Shown here: in pieces, positions 7,291-11,682 of the stretch | How the letters are laid out: each line of letters starts with the position of its first letter | Position numbering within the stretch: position 1 is the stretch's first letter | Assembly: GCF_902459465.1 (NCBI RefSeq) | Contig: NC_047073.1 | Span: 13,082,001-13,146,000, forward strand | Direction of reading: 5' to 3' | DNA: 64,000 bases | DNA from: Asterias rubens | Lineage: Eukaryota | Notes under the pieces: model-generated | What the model was told of the DNA's origin: nothing | Seen by the model: only the letters and a program-made list of their open reading frames with translations | The model's database searches: none | Position numbers and translations under genes: made by a program

Positions 7291-8662
7291 CACTTGGAAG
7301 TTGAGTTTGGCCAGTTTGTGAACTTTCCTCAAGCAATCATAGAAGGGGGAGGTTGGGTTAGAGAGGGGGGGGGGCATGTTTAATTCGGACGAGACCATGG
7401 TGGGTGGTTTCGGGGCCAGTTTTGTCCGAAATGTCGTTCGTCAATGTAGATGGGGAGGGTTGTGGGGACCATTGTGATTTTGGATGTTCGTTTTGTCCGT
7501 TTGGTGAACTGACTGATCAGCAATAGTCATAGACGGGGAGGGGGACCGTGGTGGTGCAAGGGGTTATTTTATTTTATTTTTCGTTGGGAACTTTAGTTCA
7601 GCATGTGGTGGTTGGGGGGGGGGGGCTTAAAGAGTACCCGGCTCGTAAAAGAACACTTCAAAAGCAAGTTAGCAACCTATAATAGCATATTATTATGTTA
7701 TTGTCCTTAATAATACCCCCAACGTTGATACTTTGTTCACTATGTTCAATTCAATAGATATATGCATTGCCTTTTCAACAATAAGAATAATCAGTACATG
7801 AAAAAAAGTGACCAAATCATGAGCACATAAAGTGTTCAAAGTGCTTTGATTATCATTGTGTTTCGCTCAGATATCCATTCTGTAATGGTAAAGATTTGCA
7901 GCCAAAACCCTTACAGTCAATGACATCATTCGGCAAACAATCTGTAGCTGACAGAGAACAAAAATAACATCGGAACAATGGACTGACAGCATTTTGTAGA
8001 CTTGTTGTGTAAACAAAAAGGTGGAGTTTGACACTTCGAAACGGTAATGACCGGACAAGTAGGCCTACTGGGCACAGTCCGGGCATATTCCTCGCAATAA
8101 ATTTTAAAGGAAAAGTATACCTTTGATTATTTTTTAACCATTCGTTTGTTTTAATCTATGTAGATAAACATAATAAACCTAACAATCATCTGAAAATTTC
8201 AAAAAGTGGTCGCGTTTTTTTGTGTTTTTTTTTTTAGATTATCGCCGAAAATCCGGAGCGAACATAGTTTTACTAAAAAATTTGTGCATTCTGAATGGTT
8301 TTATTGAGGAGCAAATTATGATTTTTTTAAAATAGCAACTGACACATTTTGCATATTATTTTGCTCTGCTATACAAGGAAAATCGTTCACTGTGTTTATA
8401 TCCCTTGTTGGGGTTTGCCGTTTTCTCAGGAGCAAAACATGTAAGCTATGAAAAAAAATAATACCTTGCCACCACAGACTTTTACTATTCTAGAGCCAGC
8501 GCTTGGTGGCGCTATGAAAAAATTACAACGACATAGTCGGATACCCTCATGGCAGGACTTGTGCCATCTGATAGTGTTATGGAACACTAGATACCCGACA
8601 ACTGTAATATTGTTTTTTTCTGCACAAGTTTTGCGGCTGGGCTGCTCACAAAAGTCGACGAA

Positions 8663-10867
8663 ATGGAAGAAAAGGGAAGAGTGAATACCTTTGTTAATGA
8701 TGGAAGCTTCATGGAAATGTTCTGAAAGAGGATGGAAGAAGAAAAACTCAGAGGTAAAGGAGACCAATCAGTGAGCGGGGCGAAGGACGGTGAGCTGCTG
8801 GGAGGAAGCAATCAACGACGGCCCGGCGGTGACTCGGCCACGGACATGACGGAAGGGTCGTCGAGTGGCCGAACTCCCACAGATAAAGAAACACTTTTGC
8901 CAGATCAAAAAACAACCAACAAAACAGATTCTGATGTTGAACAATCTTGTGGTGCCAATTCGCAAACTTTATCCACACAACAAAGTGAGAATATGGACAG
9001 AAATTCAGATATAAAACATGAAAAGCGAAAGTCAAAATGGGAGCAAGTTGAAGAAAAGACAACAGCAGAGGAAGTGACAGCAACAGAAGATTCCAGTAAA
9101 ACAGAATCTACAGTAACGACCGCCCAGAAAAAGTATAGCCTTTTGTCACATGTAAGTCCTTTATTGGAAAATTGGTCCCCTTTTCTTTCGTCACTTTTTC
9201 ATAATATTTAATATTAAAATTATCCAATTTCCCAAAAATGTACAGACAGTTACTTTCACAGTCATGACAGTAGTTATCATGGTAAACTAAATACGAGTCA
9301 ATGGATGTTGACTAATGATTGTTGTTTGATTATATTTTTACCAAAAAACTGATGGCCCCAACACCCAACACTTTTCAACCCCAAAACTTTGAGCAGTTTT
9401 GGTGTTTATGTAATGGAAGCAGCCATAGTCAAGCGAAAAGAATTAAAAAGAGGGAGAGGTAGAAAGCGCCTTAAAAAAAGCAAGGGGATGACTAACAAAG
9501 GTGTACAGAATGAGGGTGGTATATATAGGGATGATGAGGTGGAGTTGCAAACACAAACATCCAGACCACAGGTATGCAGGTGGAACAAGGGTTAGGGAGA
9601 AAAGGTGTGACAGACTAAAGAAGGGATCTTGATGGGGGTGGGGAGCTCGGAGAGGTTAGGAGTTCTCGATGATGACAACAAGTTGTGGATCATTGATGTT
9701 CAGACAGCATGGGGACCGGGTCGAATAGTCTGGAGGTGCCTCAGAATCATGTCAGAAATGTATGGAGTGGTTTGGAAGATGGAGGATGATGTTCGTGATA
9801 CCACCAGTGTCACAGTGAGATAGGGGGTCAGGTCATCTGCACCACCACGATTCTCATCTCTCAAATATCTTGCAATTATAAAGAACTACATAGATTAGAT
9901 TGACAGTATCCAGAAGGTGAATACATCTCCTCAGACATCTGATAAAAGACTTCATCACTCGAGGTCTGCTTAAGTTTGACGCTGTCCTTGTTGTTTTTTA
10001 CACAGGTCGGCAAACGAAAAGGGGGGAAACCTTCTCTAAAGACAGGAACTGTAAAGAAGCCCAAGACTCCAGAAGCGGTATGCAGGACTTAGCCTTTTTC
10101 TTTTCCCTATCCCTTTCAAACATTGCAGATGATAAACTGTACCTTGGAGAGCATACTAAGAGCACCAAGGCGATGACCAGGGGTCACGGAGGCAGTTGCC
10201 TTTGATACCTCTGTGAAGCACTAAGGCCTCATCAATGCTTGAGAGACGCATGCCTACACCCTTCACACCTTCAGCGTTCTCCCTTAACAATTGTCCACGG
10301 GCCAAATGCCAATTAAGATGCCAAATAAAAACAGTCAAAATTCACTCCAGAAGGTCCAAACCCTGACCCAATGATCAAATAATCAAGTCTGGCTGTCGCA
10401 CAAATTTCCATTTAAACCAGTCAAATTTCTTATCAACCCCACCGCCCCCATCCCCCACCCCCCTCCCCTGTTTTGTTGGTTGTTGGCTCACATTTTGGCG
10501 GTTAATTTTTTGGAAGTAGTCTGAGGCTAACAAACGCTAAACAATTGTTGATAGCTAGATTCCTTCAAACTCTTTTTTACAACATCAATATTTTATTTTA
10601 CTTTATTTTAAGACCTTCAAATCAGGGAGCCACATTTACAGCAGTCTCCCTTAAATTTAAGTGCCCTGGGCAGTGAGTAGTACTGTCATGATTACACTGT
10701 GCCAACCCTCAACCCAACACCAACCCCATAATATGTTTATAATTTTCCTCTTTTTCCATTTTTCTTTTCAGCCTAAGGATCCATGGTCCAAGTACTTGGC
10801 AGAGGTAGAGAAATACAAAGCGCATGTTTGTGGTGATGAGGACAAATCCCGACCATTAGTCAAGTGA
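8663..10867 (+). CDS. TRIR: Telomerase RNA component interacting RNase (C19orf43 homologue); join(8663..9151,10006..10077,10772..10867) with an in-frame TGA at 8723..8725, or 195 aa from ATG 8732
   Basis: The C-terminus VGKRKGGKPSLKTGTVKKPKTPEA|PKDPWSKYLAEVEKYKAHVCGDEDKSRPLVK* matches the TRIR end (VGKRRGG..LKTG....WAKYMAEVKKYKAHQCGDDDKTRPLVK). The N-terminal FVNDGSFMEMF*KRMEEE matches FANDGSFLELFKRKMEEE. Both introns are GT-AG, phase 0. Confidence 0.88.
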
Positions 10868-11294
10868 TGAATTCTCTCCAAGCCAGCAGTAATAGTTGGA
10901 TACATTTATTTCATACTTTGGTTAATATAAAGGGAGGTTACACCTTTGGTAATTTCACCAAAACTTAATGGCCATAAAAACCTACTTGGTAAAGGGCATT
11001 GGAGAGCTGTTGATATTACAAAACATTGAAATGACACCCTTTTGAAGCTATTTGGTTTTAGAGAAAGGGGTAATTTTCATACTCAAAATTGTGAATTATG
11101 AGGAAGGCTCTCACTCATCTGAAACTTTCTGAGAGTACACAATTCTATGCAACGAGGGTGGGTTTTTTTTCTTCCATTATTTTCTTGCAATTTTGATGAC
11201 CAACCGAGCCCAGTTTTACACAGGTTTGTTATTTTTAGGCACACCAAGTGAGGATACTGGTCTTTAAGAGCTACCAAAAGTGTATCCTGCCTAT

Positions 11295-11682
11295 TTAAAG
11301 GAACCATTGCCTTGGGTCAGTCGAGTTGGTCTTTGAAAAGCGTTTGTAACCTTTTGTTATAGATTGCATATTATGATTAAAAAATATATTTTAAGAGTAG
11401 AATATAATGATCCACATAAGTATCACTCAAAATTGCGTGGTTTTCCTTTTACCTCGTCGACAAACACGGTCGGCCAATTATGGGAGTCAAATTTTTGACT
11501 CCCATTAATGGCCGACCGTTTTAGTTCGCAAAGTAAAAGGAAAACCATGCAATGTCGAGGCAAATGTGTGTGGATCATTGTATTCTACTTTTTAAACATC
11601 TTTCAAACCATATGCATTTTATAACAAACGGTTACAAACGCTTTTCAGAGACCAACTCGACCGATCCAAGGCAACGTGTTTC
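11295..11682. mobile_element. TTAA-type fold-back MITE, family B
   Basis: TTAA|AGGAACCATTGCCTTGGGTCAGTCGAGTTGGTC ... GACCAACTCGACCGATCCAAGGCAACGTGTT, with a central palindrome ATGGGAGTCAAA/TTTGACTCCCAT. Confidence 0.85.

What the first reader, a model, noticed from the sequence alone, without database searches (positions are those of the whole stretch)
8663..8734. In-frame TGA inside the conserved FxNDGSF motif of TRIR
Seen: ATG 8663 (GAAATGG, good context) gives MEEKGRVNTFVNDGSFMEMF-TGA-KRMEEE, and a second good-context ATG follows 6 nt after the stop. The ORF track hides this by starting at 8732. Known: human TRIR has FANDGSFLELFKRKMEEE, so the stop replaces a basic residue. Inference: the options are a CGA-to-TGA CpG-decay nonsense allele, a consensus error, stop readthrough, or a fixed split into a 20-aa conserved micropeptide plus a re-initiated protein. 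Selenocysteine is unlikely because the homologous residue is not Cys and I see no clear SECIS.
Basis: partly seen in the sequence, partly recalled or inferred. Interest (0 to 1): 0.72.

Follow-up and report, generated by a model that had tools for sequence, protein, structure and literature searches.

The report
Reference-only stop codon in sea-star TRIR
The stop codon that splits the sea star's TRIR gene is found only in the reference genome; every other sample of this species and its relatives has an ordinary arginine codon there, so it is a private mutation or an error and not a special coding mechanism.

Summary
The window is Asterias rubens. In detail: ATG 8663 opens 20 codons (MEEKGRVNTFVNDGSFMEMF), TGA sits at 8723-8725, and a second ATG follows at 8732. 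The gene is a true three-exon TRIR/C19orf43 orthologue, and the stop replaces a Lys/Arg that is basic in all 14 aligned orthologues.

The stop is not a feature of the species. Spliced transcript contigs from three independent studies of near-identical animals read A, not T, at 8723 (AGA, Arg). In two of them this is the only exon-1 difference from the window. A run matching A. amurensis also reads A. So do an independent genomic contig that carries the promoter and intron (three differences in 1053 bp) and the A. amurensis genome. A more distant asteriid has AGG.

This excludes readthrough, selenocysteine and a fixed micropeptide-plus-reinitiation split. No SECIS was found. CpG decay is also wrong: the ancestral codon is AGA, an A-to-T transversion.

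Word-share arithmetic suggests the T is present in a read set from the reference sample itself. A rare nonsense allele in the sequenced individual (about 0.75) is therefore likelier than a consensus error (about 0.2). I could not lay the source reads, so zygosity is unknown. The RefSeq model that starts at 8732 is truncated as a result. The finding is ordinary and of low interest.

The parts
8495..8612 (+). Conserved proximal promoter block just upstream of the transcript start
   Evidence: 81% identical to a distant asteriid contig (L002), against 53-58% in the flanks. Nearly invariant against A. amurensis. Transcript contigs begin at 8611-8640.
8611..9151 (+). Exon 1 of the TRIR-like gene (5' UTR 8611-8662, coding from 8663)
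   Evidence: Spliced contigs in four runs cover 8611/8622/8628/8640 to 9151 and then join to 10006 with GT..AG ends.
8663..8722 (+). First 20 codons, MEEKGRVNTFVNDGSFMEMF, holding the invariant VNxFxNDGSF motif of TRIR
   Evidence: N8, F10, N12, D13, G14, S15, F16 and F20 are invariant across 14 deuterostome orthologues.
8723..8725 (+). TGA in the reference assembly only. It is AGA (Arg) in all other A. rubens-like and A. amurensis sequences and AGG in a more distant asteriid.
   Evidence: 8723 T>A at full depth in X5, X11, X9 and X18. L003 and L004 read AGA. L002 reads AGG. P0005, P0006 and P0007 have R21.
8732..8734 (+). In-frame ATG (Met24 of the normal protein). RefSeq XP_033636934.1 uses it as the start codon because of the reference stop.
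   Evidence: P0001 (195 aa) begins MEEEKLRGK, which starts at 8732.
10006..10077 (+). Exon 2, the basic segment VGKRKGGKPSLKTGTVKKPKTPEA
   Evidence: Joints 9151>10006 and 10076>10771 (cut +1), both GT..AG, in all four runs. Sequence, peptide placed.
10772..11336 (+). Exon 3: the conserved C-terminus PKDPWSKYLAEVEKYKAHVCGDEDKSRPLVK (10772-10864), the true stop TGA at 10865-10867, then the 3' UTR
   Evidence: C-terminal motif conserved.

Best explanation
The TGA at 8723-8725 is a single-base A-to-T difference (AGA Arg21 to TGA) peculiar to the Asterias rubens reference assembly. It sits on a haplotype that is otherwise identical to those of other individuals. Most likely it is a young, rare nonsense allele carried by the sequenced animal, with zygosity unknown. 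The normal species-wide gene encodes an uninterrupted 218-aa TRIR orthologue that starts at ATG 8663. What follows is inferred and not shown. On the T allele, ribosomes would start at the first AUG, which has a strong context, make the 20-residue peptide and terminate. Some of them might re-initiate 6 nt downstream at Met24. That would give a protein lacking the invariant N-terminal motif. The allele would be a loss-of-function or hypomorphic variant, not a recoding device.
For: (1) read laying: each of four runs gives one spliced transcript contig, with introns 9152-10005 and 10078-10771 removed, and each reads A at 8723 at full depth. In X5 and X9 this is the only difference from the window across exon 1. 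The three near-identical runs come from three studies. X18 shares 7 of its 8 other exon-1 differences with the A. amurensis genome. (2) Independent genomic DNA agrees. The ENA metagenome scaffold L003 carries the promoter, exon 1 and intron 1, and differs from the window at only 3 of 1053 positions, one of them 8723 T>A. A second ENA assembly encodes the same unspliced product with R21 (P0007). (3) The A. amurensis genome reads AGA and its RefSeq protein is a full 218 aa. The more distant asteriid L002 reads AGG. Patiria and Acanthaster have Lys there. (4) The column is Lys/Arg in 14 of 14 orthologues from sea stars to primates. (5) The T seems to be in the reference animal's own reads. X5 covers all of 8632-9146 with one mismatch yet holds only 46 of 50 sampled words, so about 4 sampled words span 8723. 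X1, from the possible source sample, holds 1.00 of the 85 sampled words of 8400-9200. X1 should therefore contain the T-bearing words. No non-source run exceeds 0.92 on the exon.
Against: I could not lay the source sample's reads, because the single read-laying run went on independent samples. The presence of T in the reference animal rests on word-share arithmetic, which assumes that the index samples words deterministically. Zygosity is unknown. X2, from the same sample, holds only 0.85 of the words, which is uninformative. No second individual carrying T was seen. The exact 159-aa product of a T-type genomic ORF is on record nowhere. An error confined to this assembly and its read set is therefore not excluded. 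Re-initiation at Met24 and the fate of the mRNA are untested.
Confidence: 0.75

Rival explanations
1. It is a consensus, polishing or sequencing error in the reference assembly. The sequenced animal, like all others, has AGA.
For: Every independent sequence has A at 8723. The reference haplotype is otherwise identical to X5, X9 and L003 across exon 1, so the T is an isolated singleton. No T-type product is on record in the protein collection.
Against: The word-share inference says that run X1 of the possible source sample contains the 31-mers spanning 8723 with T. A substitution away from any homopolymer is not the usual long-read error, which is an indel. L003 also differs from the window at two non-coding sites, so differences of this density are ordinary polymorphism.
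Confidence: 0.2
2. It is a fixed or common feature of the species: either a conserved 20-aa micropeptide plus a re-initiated TRIR, or programmed UGA readthrough or selenocysteine insertion.
For: The assembly shows a good-context first AUG, a stop, and a second AUG 6 nt later. RefSeq annotates the downstream start.
Against: None of the five non-reference A. rubens-like sources carries the stop: X5, X11, X9, L003 and P0007. Neither do A. amurensis or the other sea stars. Rfam finds no SECIS match at E<=1 in 8300-11600. Orthologues have Lys/Arg and never Cys. The base after the stop is A (UGA-AAG), which is not the known readthrough context UGA-CUAG (from general knowledge).
Confidence: 0.02
3. 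The DNA and RNA differ: the genome has T and the transcripts are edited to A.
For: Four of the A-bearing sequences are spliced transcripts.
Against: Unspliced genomic contig L003, with promoter and intron, has A, and so does the A. amurensis genome. U-to-A editing is not a known animal editing type (from general knowledge).
Confidence: 0.01

Closest known systems
TRIR / C19orf43 / PP4IP (telomerase RNA component interacting RNase), vertebrate and echinoderm orthologues
   Same: It has the same three conserved blocks in the same order. They are the N-terminal VNxFxNDGSF[ML]E[ML]F[KR][KR][KR][ML]EEE, the central VGKRxGGKxxLKTGxVKK, and the C-terminal WSKYMAEVxKYKAHxCGDxDKxRPLVK. A profile search returns hundreds of proteins named TRIR at E 1e-26 to 1e-34. 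The human protein is reported to have RNase activity in vitro, to inhibit PP4 (PMC6681864), and to be needed for resolving sister-telomere cohesion and limiting TERRA R-loops (PMC10873023).
   Different: Asteriid proteins carry a poorly conserved acidic/Ser-Thr-rich insert of about 100 residues between the N-terminal motif and the basic block. They also lack the long Gly/Arg-rich leader of mammals. The reference allele alone is interrupted at codon 21.
Private premature-termination (nonsense) variants in reference individuals of highly heterozygous marine invertebrates
   Same: It is a single-base substitution creating a stop, seen in one individual, on a haplotype otherwise shared with the population, in a gene that is intact in all relatives.
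   Different: The stop lies only 20 codons from the start and 6 nt before an in-frame AUG. Partial rescue by re-initiation and escape from nonsense-mediated decay are therefore plausible (inferred, not tested).
Selenoprotein genes and programmed UGA readthrough
   Same: An in-frame UGA inside a conserved coding region.
   Different: The UGA is not conserved in any relative. There is no SECIS, the homologous residue is not Cys, and there is no readthrough context.

Membership tests
TRIR / C19orf43 | N-terminal motif VNxFxNDGSFxExF followed by a basic triplet and MEEE | tested here: met
   Window 8663-8743 encodes it, with the reference stop at the first basic residue. N, F, NDGSF and F are invariant in 14 orthologues.
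TRIR / C19orf43 | Central basic block VGKRxGGKxxLKTGxVKK and C-terminal WSKYMAEVxKYKAHxCGDxDKxRPLVK | tested here: met
   Exon 2 (10006-10077) and exon 3 (10772-10864) encode them.
TRIR / C19orf43 | Significant profile similarity to proteins named TRIR | tested here: met
   A sea-star profile retrieves 293 proteins. Named vertebrate TRIR score E 1e-26 to 1e-32. No Pfam family covers it.
TRIR / C19orf43 | Ribonuclease activity, and binding to telomerase RNA, PP4 or tankyrase | not testable with these tools
   Known only from biochemical work on the human protein (PMC6681864, PMC10873023).
Selenoprotein gene | SECIS element in the 3' UTR | tested here: not met
   An Rfam scan of 8300-11600 at E<=1 gave only a chance sR39 hit inside exon 3.
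Selenoprotein gene | UGA conserved, or aligned to Cys, in orthologues | tested here: not met
   Orthologues have Lys/Arg. Conspecific and congeneric DNA and RNA read AGA.
Programmed stop-codon readthrough | The stop codon itself conserved across related species, with conserved coding sequence downstream | tested here: not met
   The stop is absent from A. amurensis, L002, Patiria, Acanthaster and other A. rubens-like samples.
Fixed upstream micropeptide ORF plus re-initiation | The arrangement present in other individuals of the species | tested here: not met
   None of 5 non-reference A. rubens-like sources carries the stop.

The most novel reading that the evidence does not exclude
The T at 8723 is a real segregating nonsense allele of A. 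rubens TRIR, and the reference animal is viable with it, possibly as a homozygote. Re-initiation at Met24, 6 nt after the stop, would then supply a TRIR lacking the motif that is invariant from sea stars to primates. That would be a natural deletion mutant of the motif, showing it to be dispensable for viability.
Probability: 0.1. Interest if true: 0.35.

Novelty: already known. Interest (0 to 1): 0.1.

Why it matters
It matters mainly for housekeeping. The RefSeq protein XP_033636934.1 of A. rubens is 23 residues short at its N-terminus and lacks the family's most conserved motif, only because the reference carries this stop. Anyone using it in alignments or as a TRIR exemplar should use the 218-aa form seen in transcripts and in A. 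amurensis. It is also a reminder that a single reference genome of a highly polymorphic marine invertebrate holds private disabling variants that can look like recoding. If the allele proves real and heterozygous, it offers a small natural test of early-codon nonsense rescue by re-initiation. Nothing here points to a new mechanism.

Tried and rejected
Pfam on the two pieces gave nothing useful. Rfam at a permissive threshold over 8300-11600 found no SECIS or other credible RNA. The sR39 hit at 10832-10887 (20.8 bits against a gathering score of 50) lies inside coding exon 3 and is chance. A search of the window's own assembly found a single copy, so no paralogue or alternate haplotig could be compared. 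A JGI metagenome scan with a 51-base pattern left open at the variable base found no match. An exact look-up of the 159-aa product that a T-type genomic contig would yield found no record. The bacterial-type promoter and terminator scan of 8400-8700 was empty and is irrelevant for an animal gene. The DNA for P0007 could not be fetched because the sample's file was too large, so only its protein (R21) is used. One sequencing-run run failed as busy and was repeated. CpG decay was considered and rejected, because the ancestral codon is AGA after a C. RNA editing was considered and rejected on the genomic contig L003.

Full report
**What is in the window.** ATG 8663 has A at -3 and G at +4. It opens MEEKGRVNTFVNDGSFMEMF, TGA follows at 8723-8725, then AAG AGG and a second ATG at 8732. 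The mechanical ORF list shows the 20-aa ORF and a 159-aa ORF from 8732 that runs into the intron. The stretch is single-copy in its 417.6-Mb assembly. Protein searches identify the assembly as Asterias rubens. The RefSeq model XP_033636934.1 (P0001, 195 aa, 'telomerase RNA component interacting RNase-like') starts at 8732.

**Gene structure.** Transcript contigs from four public runs define three exons:
- Exon 1 runs from about 8611 to 9151.
- Exon 2 is 10006-10077.
- Exon 3 runs from 10772, with the true stop at 10865-10867 and a 3' UTR to about 11336.
- Both introns are GT..AG.

There is no ATG between 8611 and 8662, so 8663 is the first AUG of the mRNA.

**Family.** Patiria miniata and Acanthaster planci TRIR-like proteins start MEEKGRVNAFANDGSFMEMFKRKMEQEKLR and MEEKQSVNAFANDGSFMEMFKKRMEEEKLR. 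A profile of three sea-star proteins retrieves 293 proteins, mostly named TRIR, from hemichordates, lamprey, sharks, teleosts, turtles and mammals. In a 14-sequence alignment, N8, F10, N12-F16 and F20 are invariant. The exon-2 basic block and the exon-3 C-terminus are conserved too. This is a bona fide TRIR orthologue. Pfam has no model for it. From the literature, the human protein shows RNase activity in vitro and inhibits PP4 (PMC6681864). Depleting it leaves sister telomeres cohered and raises TERRA R-loops (PMC10873023).

**The decisive test.** I laid contigs of four runs from four studies on 8300-11500. Each run gives one spliced contig of 1149-1195 nt, and each reads A instead of T at 8723, at the full depth of the contig.
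- X5 and X9 differ from the window only at this position across exon 1.
- X11 differs also at 8871.
- X18 is about 2% diverged. Seven of its eight other exon-1 differences are also differences of the A. amurensis genome.

The codon in these transcripts is therefore AGA (Arg).

**Independent DNA.** The 90%-identity cluster of P0001 holds three other members, all with R21:
- P0005 is the 218-aa A. amurensis RefSeq protein.
- P0006 and P0007 are 182-aa products from two ENA metagenome assemblies. Both run from ATG 8663 through exon 1 into intron 1, so they come from unspliced genomic DNA.

The contig for P0006 (L003, 1053 bp) spans promoter, exon 1 and intron. It differs from the window at three places only: one A in a poly-A run near 8450, G/T at 8581, and T/A at 8723. 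The A. amurensis genome (L004) reads AGA, and a more distant asteriid genome contig (L002) reads AGG. This removes RNA editing as an explanation. It also shows that the ancestral codon is AGA. The change is an A-to-T transversion after a C, which is not CpG decay.

**What is left.** The stop is a peculiarity of the reference. Two explanations remain: an allele of the sequenced animal, or an assembly error.
- X5 covers all of 8632-9146 with one mismatch, yet holds 0.92 of 50 sampled words. That is 46 words, so about four sampled words span 8723.
- No non-source run exceeds 0.92 on the exon.
- X1, from the sample flagged as the possible source, holds 1.00 of the 85 sampled words of 8400-9200.
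- If the index samples words deterministically, X1 contains the T-bearing words.

The T would then be in reads of the reference animal, which favours a real private allele (about 0.75) over a consensus error (about 0.2). Zygosity is unknown. The haplotype background fits a young variant. The reference shares G at 8871 (Arg) with X5, X9 and L003, whereas X11, P0007 and A. amurensis have A (Gln). The T therefore sits alone on a common haplotype.

**Mechanism on the T allele (inferred).** Ribosomes would start at the strong first AUG, make 20 residues and stop. Re-initiation at Met24, 6 nt downstream, is conceivable after so short an ORF, but the spacing is very tight. Any such product would lack the invariant motif. 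An early stop close to the start codon can escape nonsense-mediated decay. None of this was tested.

**Rejected readings.** Selenocysteine is rejected: there is no SECIS at E<=1, and orthologues have Lys/Arg rather than Cys. Programmed readthrough is rejected: the stop is not conserved, and the context is UGA-AAG. A fixed micropeptide plus re-initiation is rejected: none of the 5 other A. rubens-like sources carries the stop.

**Verdict.** What remains is an ordinary reference-specific nonsense variant, or less likely an error. Its practical consequence is a truncated RefSeq model.

Noticed in passing
window 8732-10867 (RefSeq XP_033636934.1 = P0001): The RefSeq protein of A. rubens TRIR-like starts at Met24 and lacks the family's invariant N-terminal motif, only because of the reference stop. 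The A. amurensis model (P0005) is the full 218 aa.
   Followed up: yes
window 8495-8612: A proximal promoter block is 81% identical to a distant asteriid contig, while the flanks are 53-58% identical. That makes it as conserved as the coding middle of the gene. It contains two short palindromes, AGCGCttggtgGCGCT at 8498-8513 and ATGGCAggacttgTGCCAT at 8549-8567. Rfam found nothing there.
   Followed up: partly
window 8871: There is a G/A (Arg/Gln) polymorphism. A is seen in run X11, in the ENA product P0007, in organism D and in the A. amurensis genome. The reference, X5, X9 and L003 have G. The A state is probably ancestral.
   Followed up: partly
L003 (ENA ERZ23498484, 1053 bp) and the contig of P0007 (ERZ23498428): Two marine metagenome assemblies contain sea-star nuclear genomic contigs. 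L003 is 99.7% identical to the window. These are useful independent genotypes.
   Followed up: partly
window 8300-8406 and 10975-11500: Summed word depth in the transcriptome contigs reaches thousands to hundreds of thousands, with many short diverged pieces and joints. These are high-copy interspersed repeats that flank the gene and lie in its 3' UTR.
   Followed up: no
window 8761-9100 (middle of exon 1): Sea-star TRIR proteins carry a poorly conserved Ser/Thr/Glu-rich insert of about 100 residues that is absent from vertebrate, hemichordate and brittle-star orthologues.
   Followed up: no
window 10832-10887: A weak Rfam hit to the archaeal C/D-box sR39 (20.8 bits against a gathering score of 50, E 0.036) lies inside coding exon 3. 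I take it to be chance.
   Followed up: no
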